The position numbers and the translations under genes are program-made. Under the pieces are notes generated by a model that did no database searches, had not been told where the DNA came from, and saw only the letters and a program-made list of their open reading frames with translations. Positions 1-28,800 of a stretch of 64,000 bases of DNA are shown here, one piece after another. Positions within the stretch are counted from its first letter, which is position 1, and every line of letters begins with the position of its first letter. The DNA is taken from the IMG/VR virus record IMGVR_UViG_3300032307_000369, positions 181,551 through 245,550 of that record, one strand, 5' to 3'.

Positions 1-780
1 CTGTATGGTCATGAAGCGTTTGTTGTTCCTATCGTTAAGTTCTCTAAATGCTTTAGCCACTACATCAAAAAACTCTTTATCACAATTTTCTAAAAACTCT
101 TTAATTTGTAATGGGTCAGTGGTGTTGCCTTCTGTAGTGTCAATACGCTTAATTCCGTTTAACATCTGCATGAGAGTAGCATCTGCTAGACGTCCCATGG
201 CGTTTGCTGCCATGTCAATACGCTGTTCTTCACTGAGATCTTCGTTTTGTATAATGGCTTGTAGCACACGATTACTGTCAAAACTTAGTAGGCTATAGTC
301 AGTTAATACCTTGTAGGTCACTGGCTCAATGTATATGGTCATATCGTTGTTGACTTTGACTTCTTCTTCCCAAAAGGTATTTTCCACAATTTGATCTAAC
401 AACGGTCTCAAGTCAATTTCAAAAGGTTCTTTTTCATTGGTGCCTGGAATACTCACATCCATGGTCATTTTTTCGCCGTATGTGGCAATGCGTATGGCAA
501 TTAATATTGCATCTAAATCTAAACTTGGACACTTCCAAGGATCTAAAATATTTGGCACACAGCTTTTAATCACGTCCACAGTGGTACGTCCGTTGAACAA
601 TGCATCTGGAGTTCTGATCAACAGCTCGTCTTTAACGGTCAGTCCATATACAGGGAACTCTCCGTTAGCTGGTATTTCTAAACTGCCTTCAGGCCAAAAG
701 CGTCCTTGGCTGGGCAATTTAAGAAATAGTTTGGGTCTTCTCATAAAAGAAGACAGGGGATTTTTACGTGGACTTTCCAT
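1..780 (-). CDS. Baseplate hub subunit, T4 gp26-like (runs off the left edge)
   Basis: Not in the ORF track. Manual translation from ATG at 780 gives MESPRKNPLSSFMRRPKLFLKLPSQG...TVKDELLIRTPDALFNG...IKSCVPNI...LDLDAILIAIRIATYGE, open to position 1. The LPS..G and DxDxILIAIRxxTYGE pattern is typical of gp26-like proteins. Confidence 0.7.
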   Translation of the reverse strand, partial: MESPRKNPLSSFMRRPKLFLKLPSQGRFWPEGSLEIPANGEFPVYGLTVKDELLIRTPDALFNGRTTVDVIKSCVPNILDPWKCPSLDLDAILIAIRIATYGEKMTMDVSIPGTNEKEPFEIDLRPLLDQIVENTFWEEEVKVNNDMTIYIEPVTYKVLTDYSLLSFDSNRVLQAIIQNEDLSEEQRIDMAANAMGRLADATLMQMLNGIKRIDTTEGNTTDPLQIKEFLENCDKEFFDVVAKAFRELNDRNNKRFMTIQ

Positions 781-10986: not shown

Positions 10987-11714
10987 TGAAATTTATCAAA
11001 CGTAAAAACATTGACACGTATCGTCCAAAAAGTCAACGATTTACTGTTGAAGTAGATGGTCGTGCAATTATTGACACAAATAAATCTTTAACAGTTCCTA
11101 TTGGATCAACCGCTGATAGACCTGCTACAGGTATCCCAGGTATGATAAGATACAATACTGACGATGAAGATTTTGAAGTTTTTACTGGTTATGGTACTTG
11201 GGGTTGGGAAAGGTTAAGAACAAATCGTCCAAGTGAAATCACTGTAAACAACATTGGTACAGGTTTAGGCGATGGCACTGTTTCAGGTGTGCAAGTTACA
11301 GTGGGCGGATCTGGTTATTCGTCAGCACCAACAATTACTTTCAGCGCACCAGATGTTGGTACAGATGTTGCCACTGGCACAGTGAATGTGAATGGTGGTC
11401 AAATTGAATCAATCACTATGACTAATGATGGTTCTGGATATATCACAGTACCAACAGTTACAATTGACGGCGCAAATCAAACAGCTACACTGACTGCAAT
11501 ATTAACAGGAACACAAAATTATCCTTTACCTGCAATACCTGTTGATGATTTAGGAGCACTCAGCGCAACCAACGTGCAGATATATGTAGAAAACGTATTT
11601 CAAATACCAGGAGTAAACTATACTTTGGTACAAGTTGGTCCCACTGCTTCAGTTAAATTTGACGCACCAGTACCATTTGGAAAACCAATATACGCTATAT
11701 TTGGATTTGATTAA
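10986..11714 (+). CDS. Virion structural protein with fibre connector motif
   Basis: PIGSTADRP...GMIRYNT...FEVF connector, GSGY..P repeats and a VENVFQIPG..Y motif. Confidence 0.6.
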   Translation: MKFIKRKNIDTYRPKSQRFTVEVDGRAIIDTNKSLTVPIGSTADRPATGIPGMIRYNTDDEDFEVFTGYGTWGWERLRTNRPSEITVNNIGTGLGDGTVSGVQVTVGGSGYSSAPTITFSAPDVGTDVATGTVNVNGGQIESITMTNDGSGYITVPTVTIDGANQTATLTAILTGTQNYPLPAIPVDDLGALSATNVQIYVENVFQIPGVNYTLVQVGPTASVKFDAPVPFGKPIYAIFGFD

Positions 11715-11746: not shown

Positions 11747-14700
11747 ATGTCTAGTATTGGAAGAATAACAGGCCCTTTATTAAAAGATAACCTTTTAAGA
11801 AATGGTGTTGATCTTGCGTTTGAGACTGATTTAATATATCTCAATGTTAATGAAGATCGCATTGGTCTAAAAACAGATTCCCCAGCAAGAGAATTAGAAA
11901 TTGACAACTATGGTCAAACGACCAATCTAATAGTTGACGATAATATACACCTACCTAATATTGACATAGATAATGTTAGCAACATTACTACTTCAAATGG
12001 CATATTGTACTTAAATGCGGCTCAACAAATTAACGCAGTTGCACTTGCTGTTGATAATCTCAAAATAGATGCAAATAGACTTTCAACAAGACTTCCAAAT
12101 ACAGACTTAGAAATAAGACCAACTAGAAAATTAGTTATTAATACTAATACCTATGTTGATGCTGATCTACATGCTACAGGAAATATTACCTTTGATGGCA
12201 GTGTCATTTTTGGTAACGATGATACTGACAATGTTGTATTTGCTTCTGACATTAACAGCAGTGTATTTCCTAATATAACAAATGAATATGGCTTAGGCAA
12301 CTCAACGAATCAATGGAAAAAACTTTGGGCAAATTCAGTTAAAGGATCCACATTAACTGTTGATACAATGACTTCGCCTTCAGGAATTGACTTCCAATTG
12401 AGATTTACAAAATCATTATTTGTATCAGTAAACGGAAGTGATAGTAATGCAGGCAATCATCAAAATGCCCCATACGGCACAGTAAAACATGCACTGAGTC
12501 AAGCAACAGCGGGCGATACTATTTTTATTTTTCCTGGTGTATATGACGAGATCACTCCCTTAATAGTTCCTACTGGAGTTAACATTGTTGGCCTTGCCAT
12601 GCGTCAAACAATTATTACACCAGTTGAAGATACGTTGTTTAATGATGTTTTTTTATTAAATGGCGAAACTAGCATAGCAGATATTACTGTAAGAGGATTC
12701 TTATATAATAGTACTCTTAATACAGGTCACGCTTTTAGATTTGCGCCCAATTTTAAAGTAACTACTAGAAGTCCTTATATTCAAAATGTTTCAGTTATTA
12801 CTAGAGGCTCTTCAGTAACTGCTGGTGTTATTGAAATTTTGGATGGTGAATTTTCTAACAGTTATCTAGATCAGATTGCTGAAGGCGGCACATCATTTAC
12901 TGCAATCTTTGAGGCTTTGGCTAATGGCGGATTGTCTAATAATTCAGAAAGCTTTGATGCTAATGATATTTTAGGATTTAATGACGGCGATGCAGGACGA
13001 GGAGTCTACCTAGATGGCAGTGTCGCAGACCCAACAAGTAATGAAGCAAGTATGCTATTCCATTCTTGTACATTTATTACTCCCGGTGTAGATGCAGTAA
13101 CAATGACTAACGGCATTAGAGCTGAGTTGATCAATTGTTTTACATATTTTGCCAACAGAGGATTTTACGCAATACAACCTCCAGGTCCTACAGAGGAAAT
13201 TACAGTAGGACCGGCCTCTACATTATTTTCTTTCACTAGCGATAGTGTAACTTTATCTAAAGAATTTTATAGTCAAAATCTTGTAGATTCTTTAGTAGGT
13301 CAAACAGCAGTTATTGACAGGTATCCTAATCCTCCACTCATTTATACAGTTGTATCAATTGAAACAGAACCATCTTCACCAACACTATGGAGAATGACTG
13401 TTGATACAACTTTCAATTCAGCAGGACAACTTAAACCTATTAGCTTTTATCCAGATGCTGGATCAATAGAGCTGATTACTAATGATATTTGGGATACAAC
13501 AGGCAACTCAGTTGGCGAAAAATGGGTAGCTTGGTTTAAAACTAATTTACCTGTTAATTTTGAAACCACTGTACAACCTGGTTGGACGATCAATGTAGCC
13601 GGAACATTGTATATTGTTGATTACATAGTGCAAGATCCAGTCAATGCCAATCAATGGAGAATATATGTTACTACTTCTCTTGTTGGTGGTGTTGGAATTC
13701 CTATTTTTTCTTCACCATTTACTGTAACATCAGGTTCACTTGGTGCTGAAGTTCGAAGCATTGGTTCAGCTAACGTCTACGGTAATTATGGCGCAGTAGC
13801 AGATGGTACAGATACATTAATGTATCTAATTGGACATAATTTTGGTTATATAGGAAGTGGGTTAGACGCATCTAACGACAACACTTTAGCTATACAGGCT
13901 AACGAAACCGTAGAACTTAATACTGGTAAAATTTATTACACTAGTCAAGCACAAGACGGCGATTTTAGAGTTGGTGATCAATTCTACATTGATTTAGAAA
14001 ACGGCATTGTTTCTTTTGATACTTCAGGAATTTCCGCTAACGGTCCAAGTAGTTTAGCCATAGAAGGCACTAATTCTAGACTATTCATAGATGCTTCTAA
14101 AATTGAATTAGGAGATTTTAGACTTAGCGGCAACACTATTGAGACTCTGACTCAACCATTCAATTTACTAGCCGCTAACGGACAAACGACATTTGCTGAC
14201 AACGTCCAAGTTGGCAAAAATTTAGCTATAACTGGAGATTTGCAAACTGACGGGACTCTAACATTTGGTAATCAAACTCAAGACACAGTTACATTTAACA
14301 CTGACTTAAGTCAAAACTTAAACCCTAAAATCACTAACTCTTTTGATATAGGAGCAGTGGGTAAGATTTGGCGTGACATTTATATTGCCAATATTAAGAC
14401 ACAAGATATCAACATTGGTAGTAATAGAATAGAAACTACATTGACTGATAGTAATCTTTTATTATCAGGTAATGATACTGGAAACACTAGATTAGAGGGA
14501 ATATTATTTGGCAACAACAGTATAACTTCTACAGTGCTTAACAGTAATATAGTGCTGGCTCCATCTAGTAATTCCAACCTAGTTATCGCTAGTAGTACAG
14601 CATTTCGTGTTCCTAGAACCACTGTTACATTAAACAGAATGGGCGAGGTACGATTCAATACAGCAACTGGGTTGTTTGATGGATTTAGTACAGCATTAGT

Positions 14701-15229
14701 TGGATTTGGTGGTGTATATTCTGCTGATAGACAAACAAGTCTACTGGCTCATCCAACAAATAACACCATAATATTTAGGGCAGATAACGTTGCTACAACT
14801 GTGATTGATTCTACAGGATTGACAACAAATGCACTTCACAGCGATGGCCTACAACTTAATAATAACACAATAACTGCTATTGGGACAAATGATCTTGTCT
14901 TAGTAGCAGATAGTGTAAACGTACAAAATCTTACCATAAACGACAACACCATAAGTCCTAGTACACCAAATACTAATTTAGAATTAGGAACTACTGGAAA
15001 TGCTGGCTACATACAATTTACTGGAACCGGGGCATTAGAGTTTCCTGTAGGCGATAATGCAAGTAGACCATCTTCTCCTGTAGTTGGAAATACTAGATTC
15101 AATCCTGAAGTTCAATACACGGAAGTTTGGAGTGGAACTGCATGGATTCCAGTGACTGGTGTTGGTGAACTTTCCACGTTTGAATACGCTAACGAACAGA
15201 CTACTCTTTGGTCTATCATCTTAGGTTAA
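11747..15229 (+). CDS. Large fibre / virion protein with beta-helix-like domain (paralog A)
   Basis: 1160 aa; N-terminus GRITGPLLKDNLLRNGVDLAFETDL is nearly identical to that of the next gene; FVSVNGSD..G...P..TVKHAL and RSPYIQNVS motifs; TAAATA at 11720-11725. Confidence 0.75.
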   Translation: MSSIGRITGPLLKDNLLRNGVDLAFETDLIYLNVNEDRIGLKTDSPARELEIDNYGQTTNLIVDDNIHLPNIDIDNVSNITTSNGILYLNAAQQINAVALAVDNLKIDANRLSTRLPNTDLEIRPTRKLVINTNTYVDADLHATGNITFDGSVIFGNDDTDNVVFASDINSSVFPNITNEYGLGNSTNQWKKLWANSVKGSTLTVDTMTSPSGIDFQLRFTKSLFVSVNGSDSNAGNHQNAPYGTVKHALSQATAGDTIFIFPGVYDEITPLIVPTGVNIVGLAMRQTIITPVEDTLFNDVFLLNGETSIADITVRGFLYNSTLNTGHAFRFAPNFKVTTRSPYIQNVSVITRGSSVTAGVIEILDGEFSNSYLDQIAEGGTSFTAIFEALANGGLSNNSESFDANDILGFNDGDAGRGVYLDGSVADPTSNEASMLFHSCTFITPGVDAVTMTNGIRAELINCFTYFANRGFYAIQPPGPTEEITVGPASTLFSFTSDSVTLSKEFYSQNLVDSLVGQTAVIDRYPNPPLIYTVVSIETEPSSPTLWRMTVDTTFNSAGQLKPISFYPDAGSIELITNDIWDTTGNSVGEKWVAWFKTNLPVNFETTVQPGWTINVAGTLYIVDYIVQDPVNANQWRIYVTTSLVGGVGIPIFSSPFTVTSGSLGAEVRSIGSANVYGNYGAVADGTDTLMYLIGHNFGYIGSGLDASNDNTLAIQANETVELNTGKIYYTSQAQDGDFRVGDQFYIDLENGIVSFDTSGISANGPSSLAIEGTNSRLFIDASKIELGDFRLSGNTIETLTQPFNLLAANGQTTFADNVQVGKNLAITGDLQTDGTLTFGNQTQDTVTFNTDLSQNLNPKITNSFDIGAVGKIWRDIYIANIKTQDINIGSNRIETTLTDSNLLLSGNDTGNTRLEGILFGNNSITSTVLNSNIVLAPSSNSNLVIASSTAFRVPRTTVTLNRMGEVRFNTATGLFDGFSTALVGFGGVYSADRQTSLLAHPTNNTIIFRADNVATTVIDSTGLTTNALHSDGLQLNNNTITAIGTNDLVLVADSVNVQNLTINDNTISPSTPNTNLELGTTGNAGYIQFTGTGALEFPVGDNASRPSSPVVGNTRFNPEVQYTEVWSGTAWIPVTGVGELSTFEYANEQTTLWSIILG

Positions 15230-15242
15230 TTTCAAAAGCAAC

Positions 15243-15349
15243 TAAATAATAGTACTGCAAACAATGACCAATTGTTTGCGAAATCATACTGTGGTAAACC
15301 CGCAATGCAAGGTGGTTAACCGTGAAACACGGGGTACAAGGAGTGAACG
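15243..15349 (+). promoter_or_regulatory. Late promoter plus structured 5' leader
   Basis: TAAATA at 15243-15248; hairpin GCAAACAAT/ATTGTTTGC at 15257-15279; GTGGTWAACC at 15291 and 15312; hairpin CCGTG-AAA-CACGG at 15320-15332; AAGGAG Shine-Dalgarno. Confidence 0.5.
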
Positions 15350-18300
15350 ATGGCTGTTGGTCGAATTTCCGGTCCGCTCTTAAAGGCAAATCTGCTTCGT
15401 AACGGAGTTGATCTGGCTTTTGAGACAGACCTATTATACTTAGATGTTAACAATCTCCGAGTTGGTGTTAAGACTAACAACCCTAGCCACGATTTACACG
15501 TAAACGGTACCACAAGAACAACTACATTAGAAGTAACTGACCAATTAGACATTGGTGAAATCACTGTTACTAACAATACAATTAGCACAACTGCTAGTCA
15601 ATTGACTTTGAATCCTGCAGGATTAAATCCTGTAGTTTATCAGCAAAAAATTGTCATTGATGATTTAGACATTGAAAATAATTCCATAACGGCCAACATA
15701 GCTGATACTGATATTGAGCTGACTGCTAGTGGAACTGGACGTGTAACAGTATTTTCAGACACGCTGATTAACGGTAATTTACACGCAACTGGAACAATCA
15801 CTGCTGACGGTGACATCCAATTGGGCGACGCTAATACTGACAACGTTGTTTTCAATGCTGACATTGACAGTGACTTTATTCCTAATCTAAATATACAGTA
15901 TGATTTGGGATCAACATCAAAACGTTGGAAAGATTTATGGGCAAATGACATTCAGGTTGCCAATTTAGACATTTCAAATACGTTTTTACTTAATGGCGTA
16001 GATCTAACTCTTCGTCCAGGAAATACATTTTTTGTTTCAGAAAATGGCAACAACACACGTACTGGAACTCATCAAAACGATCCGTTTGCAACAGTGGCAC
16101 ATGCATTAAGCGTGGCGCAAGCTGGGGACGTAGTTTATATATATGCTGGAACATATACTGAAACAACACCATTAACAGTGCCTGCAGGAGTTACAATTAA
16201 GGGAGCAGGTCTACGCTCAGTGACTATACAGCCAGCAGTTGGCACCATTAGTAATGACGTCTTCTTACTAAATGGCGAAACTACAATTGAGGATCTAACT
16301 GTTACAGGGTTTAGATATAATAGTGTAGCAAATACTGGTCATGCTTTTAGATTTGCAAACAATTTTACAGTAACATCAAGAAGCCCTTATGTTAGAAACA
16401 TAAGTGTAATTACAACTGGCTCTACTACTTCAGTTAGCGATCCAAGAGGATTTAACAGCGGTAATGCTGGCCGAGGGGCCTACTTAGATGGTAGTGTTGC
16501 CACTGCGCAAAGCAGAGAAGCCGCAATGCTATTCCATAGTGCAACTTTTATTACACCTGGAGTGGATGCCATTACAGCAACCAATGGTGTACGAGTTGAA
16601 TGGCTAAACAGCTTTACATATTTTGCTAACAGAGGATTCGTAGGCCTAAGCGGTTCAACAGGATTTGCTGGATCTGGAAAAACTGAATTAAGAGTTAGTG
16701 GAGTTACTGGCACACTTGCAGTTGGACAAACATTAACTTATTATTCAACATTTCCAACCGTACTAGCAAGCGGTGTAATTAGCAGTATAGCAAGTGATGG
16801 AAAACTTACTCTAACTGGAAAAGTAACTGGTTTACAAACAGCAGTAGAGCGTGGCGGTAAAACAATAACAGCCAACGGAAATGCTAAACTTAGCACTGTA
16901 CAGAAGAAATTTGGTACAGCTAGTCTACTACTAGACGGCACTGGTGACTATGCTACTGTACTTAGTACAGACGATTTTGCTTTTGGCACATCTGATTTTT
17001 GTTTAGAAGCATGGGTTTATCCTACTAGCACTGGTGCTTATAGAACTTTATTTGATATGAGAACAGCCTCTCCATCAGACGGGGGCGGAATTATTTTAGG
17101 TATAACTGATGCTAATCAATTATATTTTTATCATAATTTTAATTTTAGAATTGGACCAGTAGGAACTATATCACAGAACACTTGGACACACGTTGCATTA
17201 TCAAGAGTTTCTGGAAACACGCGAGCATTTATCAACGGTACCCAAGTGGGATCAACCTATGTAGACACAAATAACTATACTATTAAACCAGTAAGGGTTG
17301 GTGCAGATCCAAATGGAAACTTTGCATTTGCTGGATATATAGATGATTTACGCATCAGTAAAGGAGCTGGAAGATATTCTACAAACTTTACAGCACCAAT
17401 CAGTAGATTACCTAATGATCAAAATACTGTTTTATTAAGTAGATTTGATGGTTCAGATAATAGCACAGTGTTTATAGATGAAACTGTGTTGATACAAGAT
17501 ATTAGAAGTAGTGGTGGTGCAACAGCGACCTCTATTACATTAGTTGACTATAGTGACTTTGGTGTAGAAGTTCGTAGTATTGGATCAGCTAACATTTACG
17601 GTAACTTTGGCGCAGTAGGTGACGGGGTTGGAGTAATAATGTATCTAATAGGTCATAACATGGCCTACATTGGTACTGGGTTGCGTAGCGACAACGATGT
17701 CACGTATGTTATACAAGCCAATGAAGTTGTTGAATCAAACGGCGCAAAAATTTATTACAGCAGTGTTGATCATAAAGGTGATTTCCGTGTTGGCGATCTT
17801 TTCTACGTTAATCAACAAACTGGTGAAGTTACATTTACTTCTGCTAATTTTAATATTAATAGTGCGGGCGGACTTACTTTTACTAGCGGCTCAAATGTTA
17901 CCTATATTGATGGTAATGAGATTGACACTGGCAACTTAAAATTAAGCGGTAACACTTTAGAATCTGTTGTTGGACCGTTAAATCTTGTTGCAGCCAACGA
18001 TCAAATCAATTTATTAAACAACGTATCAGTAACAGGTAATTTAGATGTAGTTGGTAATGTTACAATTGGTGGTAACATTATTATTGGTGATGAGATTACT
18101 GACAGTATTAATTTTGTTGCAGGAATCAACAGCAATCTAATACCAAATATCACCAATACCTATGATATTGGCACTAATGATTTACGTTGGAAAGATTTAT
18201 ACGCAAATAGAACATTGGTTGGCAATATTAGTATTACTGGCAACCAAATAACCACTACTAATACCAACGGAAATTTAGAACTAGTTGCAAACGGAACTGG

Positions 18301-19075
18301 TCATGTTGCACTTGAAGGATTCATAGTACAAGAAAATCAAATCAGTACCACTACTGGCGATATGACTCTACAGCCAAGCGGCACTGGCGTAGTTGACATT
18401 GCATCTACAAAGAGTGTAGTTATTCCTGTTGGTACAGAAATTGAGAGACCTAGCGTACCACAAACTGGTATGATTCGTTTTAACACTACGATGGGAAGAT
18501 TTGAAGGATACAACGGAACAACTTGGGTATTCTTAGATGGTGTAACTGACTTAGATGGAAACACTAGAGTAACGGCAGAACTAACTCCAGGAGCAAATGA
18601 CGACACAATACGTTTTTATACTAACGGTGTAGTGGTCGCTGATTTAAACTCCACTAGACTGAATGTGTCTAAAGTTGTAGTTGATGATATTGAACTAAAT
18701 GGTTCATCCATTACCAATACAGCTGGCGGTAATTTGTCATTACAAACTGCTGGTTCTGGTAATGTAGTAGTTGAAAACTTTACCGTTAATGGTAGTGCTA
18801 TTACAAATACAGTATCAAACGCAGTTACAACACTTACATCTACAGGCACTGGTTACGTTAGAATTGCTGGTCAGGGCGGATTTGTTGTACCTTCTGGTAT
18901 ACAATCATTTAGACCAACATTGCCTGTTACTGGCATGATGAGATTTGATACACAGCTAGGTCGTATGGAAGTTTATGACGGCGCTGACTGGATTTCAGTT
19001 GCTGGTGCGGCAACTGGTGTAACAAGAGCAGAAGTAGAAGATTTAGCATTGCAATATGCAATTGCATTAGGATAA
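15350..19075 (+). CDS. Large fibre / virion protein with beta-helix-like and LamG/ConA-like domains (paralog B)
   Basis: 1241 aa; LamG-type motifs KFGTASLLLDG, DFCLEAWVYP, WTHVALSR and GYIDDLRISKG; two PxG...RP/G..RF.T connectors. Confidence 0.8.
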   Translation: MAVGRISGPLLKANLLRNGVDLAFETDLLYLDVNNLRVGVKTNNPSHDLHVNGTTRTTTLEVTDQLDIGEITVTNNTISTTASQLTLNPAGLNPVVYQQKIVIDDLDIENNSITANIADTDIELTASGTGRVTVFSDTLINGNLHATGTITADGDIQLGDANTDNVVFNADIDSDFIPNLNIQYDLGSTSKRWKDLWANDIQVANLDISNTFLLNGVDLTLRPGNTFFVSENGNNTRTGTHQNDPFATVAHALSVAQAGDVVYIYAGTYTETTPLTVPAGVTIKGAGLRSVTIQPAVGTISNDVFLLNGETTIEDLTVTGFRYNSVANTGHAFRFANNFTVTSRSPYVRNISVITTGSTTSVSDPRGFNSGNAGRGAYLDGSVATAQSREAAMLFHSATFITPGVDAITATNGVRVEWLNSFTYFANRGFVGLSGSTGFAGSGKTELRVSGVTGTLAVGQTLTYYSTFPTVLASGVISSIASDGKLTLTGKVTGLQTAVERGGKTITANGNAKLSTVQKKFGTASLLLDGTGDYATVLSTDDFAFGTSDFCLEAWVYPTSTGAYRTLFDMRTASPSDGGGIILGITDANQLYFYHNFNFRIGPVGTISQNTWTHVALSRVSGNTRAFINGTQVGSTYVDTNNYTIKPVRVGADPNGNFAFAGYIDDLRISKGAGRYSTNFTAPISRLPNDQNTVLLSRFDGSDNSTVFIDETVLIQDIRSSGGATATSITLVDYSDFGVEVRSIGSANIYGNFGAVGDGVGVIMYLIGHNMAYIGTGLRSDNDVTYVIQANEVVESNGAKIYYSSVDHKGDFRVGDLFYVNQQTGEVTFTSANFNINSAGGLTFTSGSNVTYIDGNEIDTGNLKLSGNTLESVVGPLNLVAANDQINLLNNVSVTGNLDVVGNVTIGGNIIIGDEITDSINFVAGINSNLIPNITNTYDIGTNDLRWKDLYANRTLVGNISITGNQITTTNTNGNLELVANGTGHVALEGFIVQENQISTTTGDMTLQPSGTGVVDIASTKSVVIPVGTEIERPSVPQTGMIRFNTTMGRFEGYNGTTWVFLDGVTDLDGNTRVTAELTPGANDDTIRFYTNGVVVADLNSTRLNVSKVVVDDIELNGSSITNTAGGNLSLQTAGSGNVVVENFTVNGSAITNTVSNAVTTLTSTGTGYVRIAGQGGFVVPSGIQSFRPTLPVTGMMRFDTQLGRMEVYDGADWISVAGAATGVTRAEVEDLALQYAIALG

Positions 19076-19078
19076 AAC

Positions 19079-19408
19079 ATGGCAACGAATTTTAAGAACA
19101 AAGTATTAGCAGATGTGGGAACAACTCCACAAGTGTTAGTGACTGCTGGATTGACCGCCAAGATTACAGTAATTGGATTGAGTATTACCAATACTACTGA
19201 CGGGGTTGTACTAGCATCATTACAATTAACAGACGATCTTGGAACTAGCGGATATTTTATTAGAAATGTACCAATTCCACCTAACCAAAGTTTACGTGTA
19301 ATCAATGGTGGTGAAAAATTAATTGTGGCACCATCTAATATTTTAACAGCGGTAGCAGATCAAGACACAAGTCTTGATATCATTGCTAGTTTTGTTGAAA
19401 TTACATAA
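19079..19408 (+). CDS. Small beta-rich virion protein
   Basis: Paralog of 10672-10986; tightly coupled to the upstream gene. Confidence 0.6.
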   Translation: MATNFKNKVLADVGTTPQVLVTAGLTAKITVIGLSITNTTDGVVLASLQLTDDLGTSGYFIRNVPIPPNQSLRVINGGEKLIVAPSNILTAVADQDTSLDIIASFVEIT

Positions 19409-19419
19409 GGAATAATTTT

Positions 19420-19785
19420 ATGGCACAAATTAGTATAGGCAATTGGGGTGGGGATAGTCCGTTAGGACCATCAGAACAAAGATATTTCTATGCGCTACGC
19501 ACTGATGAAGAAGGCAATTTGTATTTTACTAGAATAGATCAATGGACTAGTAAAGACAGTGTTCAAATAAACAGACCTGGCGACGGAGATGATGATTTTG
19601 AAGGATTTGAAATTGGTATTGATCACTTTGACGGTAAGGATCCGGACACGCACGAACGACCTTATCCTAATTTAGTTTACGATCAATATAGATTTGACAG
19701 TAAATCGATATACTACTACCTAAACGAAGATGGTGAATTAGTAGTTAGAATTAATAAGACTTACACTTATCCCAGTGATGTGTAA
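19420..19785 (+). CDS. Hypothetical acidic protein in the fibre operon
   Basis: AAGGA Shine-Dalgarno; internal repeat Y..R.DEEGNL / YYLNEDGEL. Confidence 0.65.
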   Translation: MAQISIGNWGGDSPLGPSEQRYFYALRTDEEGNLYFTRIDQWTSKDSVQINRPGDGDDDFEGFEIGIDHFDGKDPDTHERPYPNLVYDQYRFDSKSIYYYLNEDGELVVRINKTYTYPSDV

Positions 19786-19787
19786 GA

Positions 19788-19795
19788 TATAAATA
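19788..19795 (+). promoter_or_regulatory. T4-type late promoter TATAAATA
   Basis: Exact T4 late consensus, 38 nt upstream of the giant fibre ATG. Confidence 0.7.
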
Positions 19796-19833
19796 TAGTA
19801 ACACATTTTTAGAATGGATAAAAAGGAATAAAA

Positions 19834-22800
19834 ATGGCCGAATTTAAACTAGGTAGACTAAGATTCGTATGGAAAGGCACTTGGACTGCCACTACCGCAT
19901 ACGTAAAAGACGATATTGTTCGTCACGGTGGTAAAACATACGTTGCTAAAACAGCGCATACATCAGCATCAAACTTCTATACAGATTCAGATGCAAACAG
20001 ATGGGAACTAATGGCAGATGGTATTCAATGGATTAATACTCCTTGGACTGCTAGCACCACTTATAAAGAAGGTGACTTAGTTCGATATGGCGGAAAAGTT
20101 TATCTATGTATAGACGGTCATACTGCTAATGCTACACAGAACGGCGGCTTTTATACAGATTTAGGTATTAACAAATGGAGTCTATTTGTTGATGGTATCA
20201 CTGCTGTTGGTGATTGGACAGTTAGCACTTACTATAAGTTAGGTGACATTGCCAAATACAATGGTCTTACTTACATTTGTACAGAAGGACACACTTCTTC
20301 ATCTACAACTAGTAGTGGTTTAGAAGCAGACATTGGTAAATGGGATGTCTTTGCTGAAGGTATTAAATATCGAGGTGCTTGGTCAGGCACAACTCGTTAC
20401 ATTCTAAATGACGTAGTTAAATTTGGTGCTAGTTTATATATTTGCGCACTACCACACACAAGTACTAGTGTGTTTGAAGATAACAGATGGTTCTTATTCA
20501 CATCTGGATTTGAATTTGGCGGAGAGTGGACCAATTTAACAGAATATCAAATTGGTGACGTAGTTCGTTATGGTGGTTACTTGTACGTAGCCGTTTCTAG
20601 AAATACTGGACAAGTTCCAACTGGAACTTCTGGTAATTGGACATTGTTGTCCATGGCATATAGTACTAATGGTACTTACAGTAACGTTGCTACATATAAA
20701 CCAGGTGAAGTGGTAAGACACGGTGGTAATACATTCGTAGCCAATCAAGAAATTGGCGTAGGTGAAACACCAGTTAGTGATGTTGCCAAATGGGACTTGC
20801 TAGTTTCAGGTGTTCGTTGGACTGGTGATTGGACTGCGACTCCAACTGAAGTAACTTACAAGATTAATGATCTAGTAAAATATGTTGCTACAACATACGT
20901 TTGCGTAACAGAACATGATCCTACAAACTTAAATCGTCCTGACTTAGATGCACTTGGAACAAATTGGATTCCTTTTGCAGAAGGTGCAGACGTAAACGTT
21001 ATGGTTCGTAGAGGTGATTTAGTCACTCGTAATGCCATACAGAATATTAGATTACCAGTGGGTGATGCTGGACAAATTCTAAAGGTGCAGAATAACGGCC
21101 TTGATTTAACTTGGGGTAACGTTGGTAGTATCACTAACATTTATTATGTTAGTACTGAAGGTCTTGATGGCCCAACACGTGGAACATCTATTGACCAGCC
21201 ATTTAGAACAATCAAGTACGCTTGTGATTATGTAAGAACAGTTGCTCCTGCTGGATTTGATAGCCCAGCAGTTATTAATGTTAAGGCAGGTGTTTACACT
21301 GAAATCTTCCCAATAAGTTTACCAAAATTTACATCCTTGGTAGGTGATGAACTACGTATGAGTATTGTTCAACCAACACCTGAAACAAGTCACTTGGACA
21401 AGTTTAGAATGCGTGATAGTACAACTATCCGTAACTTTACATTCCGTGGGGCAACTGGTGCACCAGGCGGTGGATTTACAGATGTTAATCAGTATGGAAC
21501 AAGACGTCCAACTGGTGCGGCATGGTGCTGTTTAGATCCAGGTACTGGTCCTAATGATGAAAGCGTATGGGTAGGCGCACGTTCACCTTACATTCAAAAC
21601 GTAACAACATTTGGTGATAACTGCGTTGGTCAAAAAATTGACGGTGCATTACACAATGGTGGTAACAAGTCTATTACATCAAACGACTTTACACAAGTTA
21701 TGAGTGATAGTATTGGTGCTTGGTGTACTAACCAAGGTCGTGCAGAACTTGTTTCTGTGTTCACATACTATAGCTACATTGGTTATCTATGTGAAAACGG
21801 CGGTGTTATTCGTGCAACTAACGGTAACAACTCTTATGGTACATTTGGCTCGGTGTCTGAAGGCGTTGACCCAACTGAAATTTCTCGTACTGCCACTGTT
21901 GACAATAGAAGATTAAACGCAATTGTTGATGTTACACAAACAGATGGTGAAAGCGTTTTATACTTAGAATATTTAAATGCTGGTGAAAATTATACCTCAG
22001 CAACTTATGGATTTACTGGTTCAGGTGTAAGTGCAAGTCTTAGTGCGACTGCTGATATTGCCGCAGGCGGTGTAGCAGAAGTTCGAGTATTAGCTGACGG
22101 TGATAGTTATGTTGGCGTACAAAACAACGCACAGTTGGGTGATGCAACTTATATTAGACTAGGCGCATCAGATATCCAAATTACAAATGGATACAACGGA
22201 ATGCGTATCCTTTTAATTGACGGTACTGGTACTGGACAATATGCCTACATTAGTGCTTTTGATGGCGGTAGTAAAGATTTAACAGTCAATAAAGAAACAT
22301 TTACACCGTTAACTGTTACTGCGGTTGCTTCAACTGGTAATCTATTTACAACAGCAGACACTAGCACATTGACATTAAACATGCCAATTAATTTCCAAGG
22401 AACAGTACTTGGAAACGTTGTTGCAGATACAATTTATTATGTTAAAACTATTCCAGGTGGAACAACATTTACAGTCAGTGCTTCTATCAGTGGTGGTGTA
22501 GCTGGTACAACATTTAACCCAGGAACTGCTACTGGCACTATGGTTTTACATGCAGTTGGTTGGGACGTATTTGCTGACAATATTGTTACAAACATTGGCG
22601 GCGCAACTCAAGCTAACCCAGTAGTAATTACAACATCAACACCACACGGATTAAAGTCTACTTGGAACGCTAGAATTAGTGGCGTGACTGGTATGACACA
22701 GTTGAATGGTAACACATACTTTGTTGACGTGTTGTCAAATACAACATTTGCCCTATACACAGATTTTGGATTAACTTCGTCAGTTAACGGAACAGCATAT

Positions 22801-25800
22801 GGCGCATATTCTTCTGGTGGTGCAGTTAACGGAAAACAAAGCATTGCTCCATTCTTGAATACAACGACAAGATATGTAATTGAACCACGACCAGTTTTCT
22901 CAACAGGTTCAGGCGCAAGTGCAACTCCTGTTAGAACATTAGGTATTGATGCTTTTACTATTGTTAACGGCGGTAAAGGTTACACAGACGCACCTACACC
23001 AATCATTGCAGGCCCAGACACTGTATTAGACGCGGTTAATGCAACAGCGACAACTACTATTTCTGGACCAGTTGACACTGTAACTGTTTATTCTAGAGGT
23101 GGTGGCTATACTAGCGCACCTACTTTACAGTTTGTAGGTGGAGGCTTACCAACAGATTATGTTGATTTTGCGGCAGAAGCTGTTGTTACATTAGGTACTG
23201 CAATTTTTGTTCCTGGAACTTTAAGATTTTATGAAGTAACTGTTGCTGGAACACTTGGACTAACAGCGCCAACACACACTAGCGGAACTGCTACTAACGG
23301 AACTGCTACCGTAAGATACTTAGGTAGAAGAGCCAGTGCAACTGCTAACATGACCAATATTATTAAAACATTGGTATTGAATAGTGGCGGTGTTGGATAC
23401 ACTAGCACTCCTAGTGTGCAAGTAAGTGGGGCTAGTGGTTCAGGAGCAATTATTTCTGCAACCATCAGTCAGGTTATTAACCAAATTACACTTGATACAC
23501 CAGGTGCTGGATATAACACTGCTCCTACAGTCACTCTAATAGGCGGAGATCCGTTAGAGTTTGCAACAGCTCAAGCAGTACTAGATGCTACGTTAACTGG
23601 AGTTACTATCGTTGAAGGTGGTAACGGATATGTTCCTGCATCAACAACAGTTATTGTATCTGCTCCACCTGCTGGCGGTACAACTGCTACTGCTGAAGCA
23701 GTTATTGACTTTGGTGCATATATTCCAGGAATTACACCAGGAGCAGTTACCAGCATTAATATTCTTACTGCTGGTAGTGGTTATGCAACATCGCCTGCAA
23801 TAATTATTAATGGTGTTGGTAGCGGAGCTAGTGCTCAAACAATTATTACTGGTGAAATTGATAGAATTGAAGTGATCAACAGAGGTAGAGGATACGAATC
23901 TACTCCAGCAGTTAGTATTACTGGTGGCGGCGGATTTGGTGCAACAGCTACAGCTAGCAGAACAGGCTCAGTAAACACTATTACAATTATTGATGGTGGA
24001 GCTGGATTTACTGGCAATCCTACATTAGAATTTATTGGCGGTGGTCTACCCAACGGAAGTCCAAGTCATGCAACAGCCGTAGTTTCAGCAATTGACTCTG
24101 TAGTCTCAACTGTCACTCTTGTAGACGCTGGTGATAATTATACTTCAAACCCTGCAATTTCTGTAACAGGTGGTGGCGGAACAGGACCAACACTAAGAGC
24201 TAGAATTAATGGTCAGATTAGAACTATCACAGTAACTGATCCAGGTAGTGATTATAGTGCTGTAGTAGCACCAGTCATTGCGTTTAGTGGTGGTCGAGTG
24301 TACAAATCACCAGTTGCTGGTCTAAGATATTATACAAATGCCAGTGCATTAACCGCAATTGGTATTAGTCAGTTGACTCAAACACTTGCTGGTATTGCAA
24401 GAGCAACTGTTCTAGCTAAAAACGTTGTTGCTAACACAAACCCTGTGACCTCATATCAACAAGCAGTGACTCGTACTGCTGGCGGTGTAGGTTATACTCA
24501 GCCAACAAACATTGGTTTTGCAATTGACAGTTGGATGAACGGTGTATATTACACAATTGAAAACGGTCAAAATCATGTCAATGCCGCACAAGTGCTAAGA
24601 CTAAACAGACGTTTTTTAAGAACAGACGCAATGCAGTTCTTGGCAAACAACTATCCAGCTGTTTCAGATAGTACTTGGAGCAGAGATATTGGATTGATAA
24701 TTGATGCAATTGCAAAAGATATTGAAACACGCGGAGTAGTTAACTCTTCAACAGTTGCAATTAAACAGGCTTTCATAGATGCTAGAACTGCTGAACCTTT
24801 GGCAGTATTAGGCGTAATGGATTTCTTAAGAGATAGTATTGTTAGCATTGTTCAAAACATAGTATTAACTCCACAAGTTGATGGAACTACTACTTGGGAA
24901 GGACTATGGGTAGATGCTAAGAGCTATCAAACTAATGATGTGGTGTTCTTTGCAGGCAAGACTTATACTGCACAAAGCAATCATTTCTCTAACACATTGT
25001 TCAGTGTTGATTTGGCAGCTGGTCGCTGGGTTGAAAATATCAATGGTCAACAGACTTTAGATCTTCCATTAGAACCAGGCGCTATTACCGCTACTGAAAA
25101 TTTAGGAAATTACATTAAAGGGATATTACAATATCCACCAGCTAATGCATCTTGGACAGCGGCTGCAACATTGTTGTCAAGTAACCAATCTTATATCAAA
25201 GCAGAAGTAATTGCTTATATAAACAACACATATGAAGATTTTGTATACAATCAATCACTATGTGCTCGTGATATTGGATTTATTTTAGATGCTGTAGCAT
25301 ACGACTTATTAAATGCTCTAATTGCAGAAGCTACTGCTACTGCTAGCACAACTGGTGTTATATCAAAACTTACAGTTGATACTGGCGGTGAAGGATATAG
25401 TGGAGGGGTTGTAATTGCACTTGCAGGTGGTGGCGCTAGCGGAGCACCAACAGTTAATGCAACTGCAACTGCCATTAGAAATCAACTAACTGGTGCAATC
25501 ACTGGCTTTACAATGACTAATAAGGGTAAAGGATACGCTTCTTTACCAACTGTTACAATTACTCCTGATACAGGTAGTGGCGTAGTTGCTAGATGCCGAG
25601 TTGTTGGTGGTAACGTAAGTAAAGTGAATATTATTCATCCAGGTAGTGGCTATACTTCTGGACCGTTCCTAAGACTAGTTGATCCAAATAACAGTGGAGA
25701 TGCGGCATTCCAAGTGCGTGTTGCAAACGGCGTTCTAAAACAGCCTAAATTTACTGGTAGAGGAACAGGATTCTTAACTGCTGCCGTTGACATTAGTGGT

Positions 25801-28800
25801 GACGGATTTGCTGAAATTGCACAAACAGGTAGCTTTATATATGTTAAGAACTTAACAAATATTCCTACTCCAGGTGCAAACATACAGTTTGAAGATAATG
25901 ACACATTCTATAAACTAGTTACAGTTCGTGAAGTTATTGGACCACAAGGAACAATTAATGCTAGAGCAATTTTACTAGCTAACAAAGCGTTCGTACAGGC
26001 AGAAGTTATTAGCTATTTGAATAACTTCACATTTGACAGTGTAAAATGCTCACGAGATATTGGTTATATTATTGATGCTTTAGCTGATGATTCATTAACT
26101 GGATCTAATCAAAGACTATTAGCAGTAAGATGGCAGTATGCTAGAGGATTATATACTACATTTGACCGTCAAAGAATGCAAACTGCGTATGTATTAGAAT
26201 ACTTGCAGACAGAAATTAATCAATTATTCAACTATGCTGATAATGAAATATCTCAAACATTGAATGATTTGATTGAGTGGATTAAGAACGAAGAATATTA
26301 TAAAGATATTAAAGTTCCTTTAAATCCTCCTGCTGGATATGATGCAGAAAACGATGCTGGTTCTGCTGTACTAACTGCTAACCGAGAGTTTATTGCAGGA
26401 AATGCGCTAAGAAGATTTATCAACAATGCCCCTGCTGGCACATATACTTACAACTTAGAAATATGGTTGCAAGAATTTAGACAAGTAGTCGACAGTGTTG
26501 CATATGACTTAATGTACGCTGGAAATCAACAAGTGATCGAACACAGCTCAACTTTCTATAGTGGAGCAAACTTCATACTTGCTGGTTATACTGGTGACAC
26601 AAGTTTAGTAAAAGCAGAATTTGTAAACACGTTAACTTACATTAAGACATTGGCACAAGACATTGTACAGAATAATGTAATAGCTTCATTACAATCTGGA
26701 TATACAGTTAGCGGAACTGTTGCGGTGGTCAACGCATCAACAGGCGCTGTTACTGGTCCTGCACAAGACAGAACTCTAAGTGCTGGTGATACTGGTACCG
26801 CATTCCGTTCAGGCGGATTGTGTGATGACTTTATTTCAATTGTTAACAATAGTCCAACAACTATTGGCACAACTGTTACAGCTACCGGTACTTCCTTTGC
26901 AGGATTTGCTAGTGGCGATGTTGCTAAGAGAACAACGCTTCTAAATGCTAAACCAACATTGCGTACACAAGCAACAACTTGGATGACTGACAACTTTGTT
27001 GATTTTACGTATGATCAAGAAAAATGTTCTAGAGACGTTGGAATTATCGTTCAAGCAATTGCTGATGATATATATGGTGACGTAGCTAAATCTGTTGAAG
27101 CAGGTCAACGATATTATGCAGCCACTGCGGCTTTAGTGATTAGTGCGCAGAAGCCACAAACTATCGCAGCCATTAATTGGATTGGTGAAGTAGTACGCCG
27201 TGTTACAAATAACGTTACATGGGTAAGAACACAGAATCGTGTTTTCCAAGAACGATTCCCAAGTTTAACTGGCATGAGCGAAGCATTACCAGTACTACAA
27301 GAACGTGTAAACATTATTAAACGAATTGTTGAATATGGTGCATTCTTTGATCAAGTTAAACAAATTCTTTTAGATAACAAGTCTTATATTCAAGCTGAAG
27401 TAGTAAGTTTTGTTGACGCAACTTATGAAAACTTAAACTACAGTAGATCACTATGTTCTAGAGATGCAGGTTTAATTGTAGACGCATTGATATATGACGT
27501 ATATGGCGGATTGAGTAGAAGTCGTGAAGCTGGTCTACGTTATTATCAAAGCGCCAGTGCGTTGCTTGCCATTACTGGAGATCAATTGATTCCAACAACT
27601 ACTGCTATTAACTATCTAAGACAGTTAGCACAAGCAGTAATTTTAAATCAAAATCCTTCAGTTCAGTTCCAAGAAGCTGTTCTAAGAACAAGTATCAACA
27701 CAAACACTGGATCAATAGCGTTTGTAGCAGTTACTCCAGGATCTAATTATAGCCAAGGTACAAGTATCACAGTGAATACTGGTGGTAGTGGATCAATTGC
27801 TGGCGAAATTGATGCTGTGGTTGATGTTGCTACTGGTAGTATTATTGAAGCAACAGTTGTTAATGGTGGTTCAGGATTTAATAATGCACCAAGTTTAGCA
27901 ATAACAAAACCTGTTGCAGTGGTAAAAACTTATGCTAATATTTCAGGAACAACGTTGACTGTAAGTGACACTGTTGGAATATTTGTTGGCATGGAAGTTA
28001 CTGGTACAGGATTTACTAGCAATCAACGTGTAGTATCTATTAACAGTAATGGAATTGCAGTTGAACTTAGTGCAACGTCTGACGGTACTCCTGCAGGCAA
28101 TATCACATTCACTGATATTGGTAGTGGAGCAAGCGCAACCGCTATTTTAGGAGTTGCTTATAATACTGCACATGTATCAGAACTACTAGTTGATGAGAAG
28201 ATTGACGAAGCAACTGCGGCACTATTGGCAGTTATTGCTGGCGGTCCAAGTGTATTACCTGCTGGTAGATATGCGGCACGTCTACAAGTTAGTCCAGAGA
28301 TTCCAATTCAAATTAGTCCTCCACATGACACAAACACTGTGGTACGTAGTAAGTACTCACAAGTTCGTTTAACTGGTCACGACTTCTTGAATATTGGTAC
28401 TGGTAACAAGAACGATACCAACTACCCAGGCATTCCATTGAACGCTCCAGATCAAGCTAACGAAGTTGTTGAAGTTGGCGGTGGTCGTGTGTTCTACACC
28501 TCAACTGACCAAGACGGTAACTTTAGAGTTGGTGAACTATTCCGAGTTGAACAGTCAACTGGTATTGCTACATTGAATGCTGATGCGTTTAACTTGAGTG
28601 GTTTGAACGAACTATCACTTGGTGGTGTTACACTAGGCGGTTCAGGCGCTGTTATTCGTGAATTCTCAACAGACAGTACATTCTTTGCTAATAGTGACAA
28701 TATTGTTCCAACACAGAAAGCTATTAAGACTTACATTCAAAGTGCTTTAGGTTCTGGTGGTGGTAACATTGCTGTTAACGCGGTTATTGCTGGTGAGATT

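What the first reader, a model, noticed from the sequence alone, without database searches (positions are those of the whole stretch)
11747..28560. Three fibre genes share one beta-helix chassis with different payloads inserted in its loops
Seen: all three proteins have the same ordered motifs: V...G.D..G...P..T..A; RSPY..N; FTY....G; (EV/VI)R...N.YG..G; L.GH....IG.G; ANE.VE...(K/R)..Y.S....G.FRVG. Paralog A inserts about 190 aa (a twice-repeated Y.V..I...P....WR..V unit, 13163-13741) after FANRG. Paralog B inserts about 310 aa containing LamG (16637-17560) at the same site. The giant has almost nothing there, but inserts about 2160 aa (21865-28356) at the next junction, which is contiguous in A and B. 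Inference: this is a plug-in display scaffold in which conserved flanks allow receptor-binding cassettes to be swapped; the three proteins may co-assemble.
Basis: partly seen in the sequence, partly recalled or inferred. Interest (0 to 1): 0.6.

Follow-up and report, generated by a model that had tools for sequence, protein, structure and literature searches.

The report
Beta-helix fibre scaffold with nested domains
Four tail-fibre proteins of an uncultured jumbo phage share one beta-helix core whose loops carry whole inserted domains, from 12 up to about 2,160 residues. In related phages the same inserted module sits in different loops, so this is a natural example of domain grafting on a known tailspike fold.

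Summary
Proteins A (11747-15229), B (15350-19075) and the giant (19834-29979) share the same ordered motifs, with BLASTP E values of 1e-13 to 5e-10 for giant versus A/B. A fourth paralog lies outside the window.

B's core folds with pLDDT 85.7 as one right-handed beta-helix of the pectate-lyase/tailspike type (Z about 20). A LamG module protrudes from one loop.

The giant's two chassis halves lie 2,158 residues apart. Folded as separate chains, they dock in coil-stacking register (ipSAE 0.82, best control 0.00).

Among about 360 relatives the inserts vary:
- Site 0 holds 0-362 aa.
- Site 1 holds 12-517 aa.
- Junction 2 holds 92-2,348 aa.

A's 188-aa module sits at site 1 in 14 relatives and at site 0 in 68. 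One of the 68 is a syntenic positional ortholog whose module is 94% identical to A's.

LamG is fixed at site 1 in all 125 carriers. A's module is more conserved than the chassis, so it is not a hypervariable payload. Recombination through conserved flanks, receptor binding and co-assembly are not shown.

Insertion domains in beta-helix tailspikes are already known. This is a new variant of that kind, unusual in scale, in the number of sites used and in module relocation.

The parts
11747..15229 (+). Paralog A, 1,160 aa fibre protein (P0001)
   Evidence: ORF, translation. PHROG 'baseplate wedge subunit/tail fiber' families match.
12386..12814 (+). A chassis segment N1 (aa 214-356): beta-helix cap and first coils, up to RSPYIQNVSVIT
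   Evidence: 46% identity to B. Segment HMM. pLDDT is 80-93 in the A model.
12815..12952 (+). A site-0 mini-insert (aa 357-402), 46 aa, absent from B
   Evidence: Gap in the A/B alignment. It forms a small family of 8 members, all at site 0. It is not related to the large module.
12953..13174 (+). A chassis segment N2 (aa 403-476), ending FTYFANRGF
13175..13738 (+). A site-1 insert (aa 477-664): two-lobed beta module of unknown function
   Evidence: The same module is found at site 0 in 68 relatives and at site 1 in 14. It is 80-95% conserved.
13739..14116 (+). A chassis segment C (aa 665-790): EVRSIGSANVYG ... GHNF ... ANE ... FRVGD
15350..19075 (+). Paralog B, 1,241 aa fibre protein (P0002)
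   Evidence: More than 3,554 relatives in the word search.
15992..16648 (+). B chassis N half (aa 215-433)
   Evidence: Model pLDDT is about 90-96. Beta-helix enzymes align across it.
16649..17557 (+). B site-1 insert (aa 434-736): small beta domain plus a LamG/ConA-like domain (Pfam at aa 529-673, nt 16934-17368)
   Evidence: PF13385 E 1.8e-22. LamG/pentraxin folds align to model 298-510 with Z about 18.
17558..17935 (+). B chassis C half (aa 737-862). Junction 2 is the turn GVGV at aa 759-762 (nt 17624-17635).
   Evidence: DSSP strands at model 543-554 and 559-563. Beta-helix alignments span model 18..627.
19834..29979 (+). Giant fibre protein, 3,381 aa (P0003)
   Evidence: CBM_5_12 x4, E1_FCCH-like and Peptidase_S74 domains.
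21094..21870 (+). Giant chassis N half (aa 421-679)
   Evidence: BLASTP to B 215-435 with E 7e-12. Alignment A2.
21871..28344 (+). Giant junction-2 insert (aa 680-2837, 2,158 aa): beta domains, GG.GY repeats and 4-5 helical repeat units
   Evidence: No PDB sequence relatives.
28345..28713 (+). Giant chassis C half (aa 2838-2960)
   Evidence: BLASTP to B 766-917 with E 1e-13. It docks on the N half with ipSAE 0.82 against 0.00 for controls.
29704..29862 (+). Giant C-terminal intramolecular chaperone (Peptidase_S74, aa 3291-3343)
   Evidence: PF13884 E 5.3e-11, 43.1 bits against a cut-off of 22.

Best explanation
[quoted passage not shown] This uncultured jumbo myovirus has multiplied it into four paralogous fibre proteins. 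Certain turns between coils tolerate the nesting of whole folded domains.

Three such sites are used:
- Site 0, after RSPY..N.SVIT.
- Site 1, after FTYFANRGF.
- Junction 2, one coil further on.

A carries a conserved two-lobed beta module at site 1. B carries a small beta domain plus a LamG lectin-like domain at site 1. The giant and the fourth paralog leave the helix at junction 2, for about 2,160 and about 955 residues of multi-domain sequence, and then return to complete it.

Across the lineage, these sites have diversified by insertion, tandem duplication, halving, allelic replacement and relocation of modules. Each protein most likely forms its own fibre or spike. In that fibre the helix would be the rigid core, possibly glycan-binding or glycan-cleaving, and the nested modules would be side-mounted binding or decoration domains.

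Shown here: the homology, the fold of B's core, the positions of the inserts in turns, and the variation and relocation among relatives. Inferred: reunion of the giant's halves (prediction only), oligomeric state, glycan binding and any enzymatic activity.
For: 1. Motif order and pairwise E values support homology of the chassis.

2. B 205-900 folds with mean pLDDT 85.7. Beta-helix structures align across model 18..627 with 245-260 aligned residues, skipping the insert:
- PL9 rhamnogalacturonan lyase 5olq, Z 20.3, rmsd 4.0.
- Pectin methylesterase 8tne, Z 19.4.
- GVE2 ORF18 7chu, Z 19.3.
- Fri1 tailspike 6c72, Z 19.1.
LamG/pentraxin folds align separately to model 298-510 with Z about 18.

3. 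Giant 415-679 plus giant 2838-2975 were folded as two chains. ipSAE was 0.82 against a best control of 0.00. That mark was reached by 58 of 80 solved complexes and 2 of 110 mismatched pairs. My own alignments were used, so the calibration holds only roughly. The runs agree in at least 97% of contacts, and partner pLDDT is at least 83. Residues 659-663 (IRATN) stack on 2844-2848 (VRLTG), the register of adjacent coils, which lie 23 residues apart in B.

4. Census of relatives:
- Site 0 holds 0-362 aa and site 1 holds 12-517 aa. Bare, single, double and mixed occupancy all occur.
- There are eight insert families. LamG has 125 members, all at site 1. Module A has 82 members, 68 at site 0 and 14 at site 1.
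- Junction 2 holds 92-2,348 aa in cultured cyanophages, a pelagiphage, a podovirus and 120 metagenomic giants.

5. P0131 is the syntenic positional ortholog of A. It carries A's module at site 0 at 94% amino-acid identity, while the chassis is 64-78% identical. P0207 shares about 85% chassis identity with P0131 but only about 33% in the module.
Against: - No coordinates were available, so loop positions rest on DSSP strings and aligned ranges.
- The A model is poor (pLDDT 59). The fold and function of its module are unknown.
- The docking of the giant's halves is a prediction with my own alignments. It does not show that a 2,158-residue excursion folds this way in a full-length protein.
- Third-codon identity in the module (67%) equals that of the capsid gene (70%). 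So its high conservation may reflect selection rather than recent transfer.
- The relatives were sampled by word searches seeded on these proteins and limited to 0.55-1.75 times the query length. Frequencies are therefore biased.
- No catalytic residues, trimer or receptor were tested.
Confidence: 0.72

Rival explanations
1. The beta-helix is primarily an active polysaccharide depolymerase (lyase, esterase or hydrolase) that degrades a host surface glycan. The inserts are accessory carbohydrate-binding modules, as in Klebsiella or Pseudomonas tailspikes, rather than 'payloads' on an inert scaffold.
For: The best structural matches are PL9, CE8 and PL6 enzymes and capsule depolymerase tailspikes, with Z 17-20. 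Relatives carry weak DUF1565 and Pel9A-like Pfam hits. Polar motifs (RSPY, DG..H/A, NE.VE, D..G.FRVG) are conserved between paralogs that are only 27-33% identical. LamG is a lectin-type fold.
Against: Sequence identity to the enzymes is only 11-18%. No catalytic or Ca-binding residues were mapped, because no coordinates were available. Pfam and NCBIfam give no enzyme family for the window's own proteins. The conserved motifs could equally be structural.
Confidence: 0.4
2. The inserts are old, vertically inherited features of distinct orthologous families (an A family, a B family and a giant family). The appearance of a 'plug-in' system comes only from comparing paralogs, and no real cassette movement occurs.
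For: LamG is present at site 1 in all 125 carriers and in cyanophage 'gp7' genes, colinear at 41% identity. All G-type relatives have an insert at junction 2. The A/B flanks share no long identical DNA. The module's synonymous-site identity is no higher than the capsid gene's.
Against: Module A sits at different loops in syntenic positional orthologs. It also occurs at both loops, as a tandem pair and as a half copy. Some proteins combine module A at site 0 with LamG at site 1. P0131 and P0207 have near-identical chassis but modules only 33% identical.
Confidence: 0.15
3. The giant's N and C chassis halves do not reunite within one chain. They are remnants of a fusion or split and pair between subunits of the fibre, or not at all.
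For: A 2,158-residue excursion from one helix turn has no precedent that I found in my searches. Only a two-chain prediction supports reunion, and that prediction cannot distinguish pairing within a chain from pairing between chains.
Against: Both halves are retained in the same order in every G-type relative, from 92-aa to 2,348-aa inserts. The interface is in exact coil register, and controls score 0.00. In many relatives the protein ends 23-90 aa after the C half, so the C half has no other obvious role.
Confidence: 0.15
4. A, B and the giant co-assemble into one hetero-oligomeric fibre through the shared chassis.
For: The genes are adjacent, and A and B share N- and C-terminal regions.
Against: Beta-helix tailspikes are homotrimers as a rule (established knowledge). 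The giant has unrelated termini and its own S74 chaperone. Relatives carry different numbers and combinations of these genes. No test was run.
Confidence: 0.05

Closest known systems
Phage tailspike depolymerases with insertion domains (LKA1 gp49, KP34 gp57; DepoCatalog class 2A-2D)
   Same: [quoted passage not shown] The insertion position varies between proteins, and double insertions occur (PMC5701251, PMC10653864, PMC13385381).
   Different: Here the inserts reach 2,158-2,348 aa of multi-domain sequence. Three defined sites are used combinatorially within one homologous family. The same module is found at different sites in positional orthologs. Activity and trimer state are unknown.
PL9 pectate/rhamnogalacturonan lyases (Pel9A-like beta-helix; PDB 5olq) and DUF1565
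   Same: 5olq is the best fold match (Z 20.3, 257 aligned residues). The N-terminal cap motif matches at sequence level (5olq E 0.0025). Relatives carry DUF1565 and Pel9A-like Pfam hits.
   Different: Identity is 17-18%. The window's own proteins do not reach Pfam thresholds. Catalytic and Ca sites were not examined. The context is a virion fibre.
Cyanomyovirus genes annotated 'gp7 baseplate wedge initiator' and 'tail fiber-like protein' (P-HM2 gp7, ACG-2014f; P-SSM2 PSSM2_301, S-SSM7_113, S-CAM1_102, Pelagibacter phage Mosig_63)
   Same: These are true homologs. B 214-898, including LamG, is colinear with P-HM2 and ACG-2014f gp7 at 41% identity. The giant's N-terminus, both chassis halves and the junction-2 site are shared with the fibre-like proteins.
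   Different: The cultured-phage versions have junction-2 inserts of only 160-340 aa. No sequence link to T4 gp7 itself was found here.
Endosialidase-type tail fibres with a C-terminal intramolecular chaperone (Peptidase_S74)
   Same: The giant ends in a PF13884 domain.
   Different: This applies to the giant only and is unrelated to the chassis.

Membership tests
Right-handed parallel beta-helix (pectin-lyase-like fold) | A continuous stack of parallel beta coils that is structurally superposable on known members | tested here: met
   The B core model has pLDDT 85.7. VIA-align gives Z 17-20 to PL9, CE8 and PL6 enzymes and tailspikes, spanning model 18..627.
Right-handed parallel beta-helix (pectin-lyase-like fold) | Pfam signature (DUF1565 PF07602 / Pel9A-like PF22842) above threshold | tested here: inconclusive
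   A, B and the giant have none at E<=0.01. Relatives P0025 and P0131 reach DUF1565 at 40 and 30 bits against a cut-off of 20.3. PF22842 is only 'faint' in precomputed hits.
PL9 polysaccharide lyase | Catalytic base and Ca-binding acidic residues in the groove | not testable with these tools
Identity is 17-18%.
Tailspike depolymerase with insertion domain | A folded domain protruding from a loop of the central beta-helix | tested here: met
   LamG aligns separately to model 298-510, while helix matches skip it. Site 1 follows strand 218-229.
Tailspike depolymerase with insertion domain | Homotrimer with glycan-degrading activity | not tested
   No oligomer prediction or assay was run.
T4 gp7 baseplate wedge initiator (the name given to the nearest annotated homologs) | Detectable sequence similarity to T4 gp7 | tested here: not met
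   phmmer of whole B, B 1-230 and B 830-1241 against all PDB chains returned no gp7 or baseplate chain. From my own knowledge, not checked here, the PDB holds solved T4 baseplates. Pfam and NCBIfam gave nothing. Only the PHROG labels carry the name.
LamG / Concanavalin A-like lectin (PF13385) | Pfam match above the gathering score, and the fold | tested here: met
   B 529-673 scores 80.6 bits against a cut-off of 27.6. The fold match has Z about 18.
Peptidase_S74 intramolecular chaperone | Pfam match above the gathering score at the C-terminus | tested here: met
   Giant 3291-3343 scores 43.1 bits against a cut-off of 22.

The most novel reading that the evidence does not exclude
One turn of a beta-helix serves as a clasp for a closed-loop fibre. 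The chain starts the helix, leaves it for up to about 2,300 residues of folded domains, and returns to finish it. In many relatives the protein ends there. This would be among the largest nested domain insertions known. Together with modules that have moved between loops in orthologs, the chassis would be a naturally validated platform for grafting domains.
Probability: 0.35. Interest if true: 0.75.

Novelty: new variant of a known kind. Interest (0 to 1): 0.6.

Why it matters
Beta-helix tailspikes are the main enzymes and receptor binders used to retarget phages, and permissive insertion points are valuable for that work. This family gives a map, drawn by evolution, of three loops that accept anything from 12 to more than 2,000 residues. 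It also shows one module working in two different loops. The family is very abundant in metagenomes, with thousands of relatives, and it includes fibre genes of cultured cyanophages and a pelagiphage that are currently annotated as 'gp7' or 'hypothetical'. The result therefore also corrects and sharpens the annotation of proteins likely to determine host range in marine phages.

Tried and rejected
- Megablast of the A-B region against GenBank phages found no match.
- Whole-protein PDB sequence searches gave only a weak cap match to 5olq. They gave nothing for the giant's insert or for B's termini.
- NCBIfam gave nothing.
- The fold of A 205-830 with a 12-row alignment had mean pLDDT 59. That is too poor to name the module's fold, so no fold search was run on it.
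- An ESM Atlas feature search for A's module scored at most 0.82, which is uninformative.
- BLASTP of the two halves of A's module found no alignment, so the internal duplication is supported only at motif level.
- I tested whether A's 46-aa site-0 insert is a remnant of the module. It is not detectably so. P0141's 96-aa insert, however, is a half module.
- I tested whether conserved flanks are recombination substrates. The A/B flanks are 71-82% identical, with no long exact tract.
- I tested whether the module was recently transferred. Its third-codon identity (67%) matches the capsid gene (70%), so recent transfer is not shown.
- A search for psbA found none, so the host remains unknown.
- Reads tools were not needed.
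- Co-assembly of the three proteins was considered and set aside, because there is no evidence for it.
Full report
**Context**

The window is the last 64 kb of a single 245,550-bp IMG/VR virus record. The record is linear and CheckV rates it 70% complete.

Upstream of the finding lie a T4-type portal, prohead protease, scaffold-like gene and major capsid protein. The capsid protein is 66-71% identical to those of jumbo myoviruses such as Sinorhizobium phage Phosso, Vibrio phage 2.275.O and Pseudomonas phage PA5oct. No psbA was found, and the host is unknown.

The three genes of the finding sit in a fibre cluster directly after the head genes:
- A, 11747-15229, 1,160 aa.
- B, 15350-19075, 1,241 aa.
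- The giant, 19834-29979, 3,381 aa.

**Checking the observation**

The six motifs occur once each and in the same order in all three proteins. The baseline spacings are 16 residues from FTY to [VI]R and 27 residues from [VI]R to GH.

- A and B exceed the first spacing, at 204 and 319 residues.
- The giant exceeds the second, at 2,189 residues.

BLASTP supports this:
- A and B align at 46% identity up to FANRGF and at 37% from EVRSIGSAN onward. Unrelated sequence lies between.
- The giant matches B in two blocks, 421-656 and 2846-2997, with E 7e-12 and 1e-13.
- The giant matches A likewise.

Pfam places LamG at B 529-673.

Three points were missed or overstated:
- A has a further 46-aa insert at A 357-402.
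- The 'repeat' in A's insert is only a motif that occurs twice.
- A fourth paralog (P0004, 2,854 aa) lies at genome positions 77153-85714. It has the same motif order and about 955 aa at the giant's junction.

**What the chassis is**

B 205-900 was folded with 38 relatives in the alignment and gave mean pLDDT 85.7.

Structural alignment shows right-handed beta-helix proteins matching across model residues 18 to 627. They have about 245-260 aligned residues, so they use both chassis halves and skip the roughly 300-residue insert:
- PL9 rhamnogalacturonan lyase 5olq, Z 20.3.
- Pectin methylesterases, Z 18-19.
- GVE2 ORF18, Z 19.3.
- Acinetobacter and Klebsiella tailspike depolymerases, Z 17-19.

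LamG, pentraxin and CBM-type jelly rolls match model 298-510 separately, with Z about 18.

The insertion points fall in turns of the helix:
- Site 1 follows the long strand at model 218-229.
- Site 0 (B 359/360) lies in the loop at model 151-170.
- Junction 2 is the four-residue turn GVGV (B 759-762), between strands 747-758 and 763-767.

**The giant**

I therefore folded the two natural halves as separate chains, each with 28-row alignments of metagenomic relatives. The halves were giant 415-679 and giant 2838-2975.

The verdict was that the model supports binding. ipSAE was 0.82 against a best control of 0.00. That mark was reached by 58 of 80 solved complexes and by 2 of 110 mismatched pairs. 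These counts hold only roughly here, because my own alignments were used. The runs agree in at least 97% of contacts, and partner pLDDT is at least 83.

The lowest-error contacts put IRATN (659-663) on VRLTG (2844-2848). The homologous segments in B are VRSIG at 741 and MYLIG at 764, which lie 23 residues apart, that is, one coil. The 2,158-residue insert is therefore predicted to leave and re-enter the helix within a single turn. This remains a prediction. It cannot tell pairing within one chain from pairing between subunits.

**Variation among relatives, A/B type**

Word searches found more than 3,554 relatives of B's core and 1,913 of A's insert region. I located the chassis segments in the 240 listed proteins with segment HMMs.

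- Site 0 holds 0, 5, 36, 44-46, 82-96, 159, 165-198, 348 or 362 residues.
- Site 1 holds 12-15 (bare), 53, 166-172, 186-197, 299-306, about 330 or 506-517 residues.
- Natural bare-chassis proteins exist, for example P0219-P0245.

The inserts cluster into eight families:
- The LamG-containing insert has 125 members, all at site 1. About a quarter carry a tandem second LamG.
- A's module has 82 members, 68 at site 0 and 14 at site 1.

Observed combinations include:
- Module A at both sites (P0138).
- A tandem pair at site 0 (P0142).
- A half copy (P0141).
- Module A at site 0 together with LamG at site 1 (P0153, P0165, P0190).

**Relocation in a positional ortholog**

P0131 (1,109 aa) lies on two metagenomic contigs in exactly the gene order of the window. 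That order is protease, scaffold, capsid, four small genes, P0131, a 1,241-aa LamG protein, two small genes and a 3,332-aa giant.

P0131 carries A's module between RSPYVQNVSVITK and AGRGAYIDGSV, which is site 0, and its site 1 is bare. The module is 94% identical to A's, whereas the chassis is 64-78% identical and the termini 43-53%.

P0207 has the same architecture and about 85% chassis identity to P0131, but only about 33% identity in the module. The drop in identity falls sharply at the module borders. Module history is therefore decoupled from chassis history, and the same module functions in two different loops.

**Limits on the 'swappable payload' reading**

- LamG is fixed at one site throughout its family. 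It is already present, colinear, in cyanophage genes annotated gp7.
- Module A is the most conserved part of its proteins.
- Its third-codon identity to P0131 is 67%. That matches the capsid gene's 70% and exceeds the chassis at 44-54%. This fits strong purifying selection at least as well as recent transfer.
- The A and B flanks within this genome share no long identical DNA.
- The samples are biased by how the word search picks candidates and by its length filter.

**Variation among relatives, giant type**

The giant's N-terminal CBM5/12 repeats, both chassis halves and the junction-2 site recur in several cultured phages:
- Cyanomyovirus fibre genes S-CAM1_102, S-SSM7_113 and PSSM2_301, plus S-SRM01 and SynMITS9220M01.
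- Pelagibacter phage Mosig_63.
- The chassis alone in the podovirus S-RIP2.

Junction-2 inserts measure 92 aa in S-RIP2 and 160-340 aa in the cultured myoviruses. In 120 metagenomic proteins they measure 631-2,348 aa. Only proteins of at least 1,860 aa could be returned by that search.

The inserts of the cultured phages share no detectable similarity with the giant's. The fourth paralog shares the giant's helical repeat units. In many relatives the protein ends 23-90 residues after the C half. In those cases the chain ends by closing the helix it began.

G-type relatives also show smaller inserts at further loops of the N half. The exact positions from that low-penalty alignment are approximate.

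**Mechanism**

The best-supported reading is a rigid beta-helix core with permissive turns into which folded domains are nested. It has been multiplied into several fibre genes and diversified by duplication, relocation and replacement of the nested modules.

LamG suggests glycan binding. The helix itself resembles polysaccharide-active enzymes, so depolymerase activity is a live rival or complement to this reading. Neither was tested.

Co-assembly of the three proteins is unsupported.

**Comparison with what is known**

Insertion domains at varying positions in beta-helix tailspikes are established:
- LKA1 gp49 (PMC5701251).
- KP34 gp57 (PMC10653864).
- DepoCatalog classes 2A-2D (PMC13385381).

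The principle is therefore known. My literature searches did not find three things: this family described, an insert of this size, or relocation of one module between loops of orthologs.

The 'gp7 baseplate wedge' label on the homologs is not backed by any similarity found here.

**Verdict**

This is a new variant of a known kind, of moderate to good interest.

Noticed in passing
G000:C1:77153-85714 (L001:5154-13718), outside the window: A fourth paralog of the chassis (P0004, 2,854 aa). It has about 955 aa at junction 2 and further inserts in the N half. A 1,138-aa fibre-like ORF with no Pfam match follows it (L001:13756-17172).
   Followed up: partly
window 29987-31039 and 31053-32969: Two glycine-rich-domain proteins: ALK/LTK GRD PF12810 (E 2.4e-13) and Gly_rich_2 PF21722 (E 3e-19). 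The first has a fibre-type N-terminal unit. Together they explain the GC peak of 0.51 at 30-32 kb.
   Followed up: partly
window 10986-11714; A aa 1057-1141; B aa 991-1079 and 1182-1220; ORF 29987 aa 2-57: A roughly 55-aa unit (P.G..RFN...E.Y.G..W; PHROGs 1325, 25721, 24138, 2803) recurs in several neighbouring fibre genes. It may be a shared attachment or trimerisation element.
   Followed up: no
window about 24500-27800 (giant aa about 1580-2640): Four to five helical repeat units with the motif C.RD.G.I.DA lie inside the giant's insert (DNA repeat family at 24685, 25270, 26056, 27034). The fourth paralog shares them. They have no PDB or Pfam relatives.
   Followed up: partly
window 22900-24300 (giant aa about 1030-1500) and 25380-25800: An array of roughly 45-aa GG.GY..P.V repeats. 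These match very large PHROG 'virion structural protein' families (phrog_701, phrog_19630) and also occur in S-SRM01 and SynMITS9220M01 inserts.
   Followed up: no
window 35505-39269: A gene cluster on the + strand after the fibres: a large unknown protein (phrog_1458), a tryptophan-halogenase-like protein (37154-38704) and a 2OG-Fe(II) oxygenase (38691-39269).
   Followed up: no
window 843-3236: A 797-aa ORF just upstream of the portal gene with no PHROG match. The same gene precedes the portal in the related contig L010.
   Followed up: no
window 28996-29097 and 29203-29304: A direct 102-nt repeat (73% identity) in the giant's C-terminal shaft. It corresponds to repeated 'TGT(I/L)RV.GG.G..G' units.
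   Followed up: no
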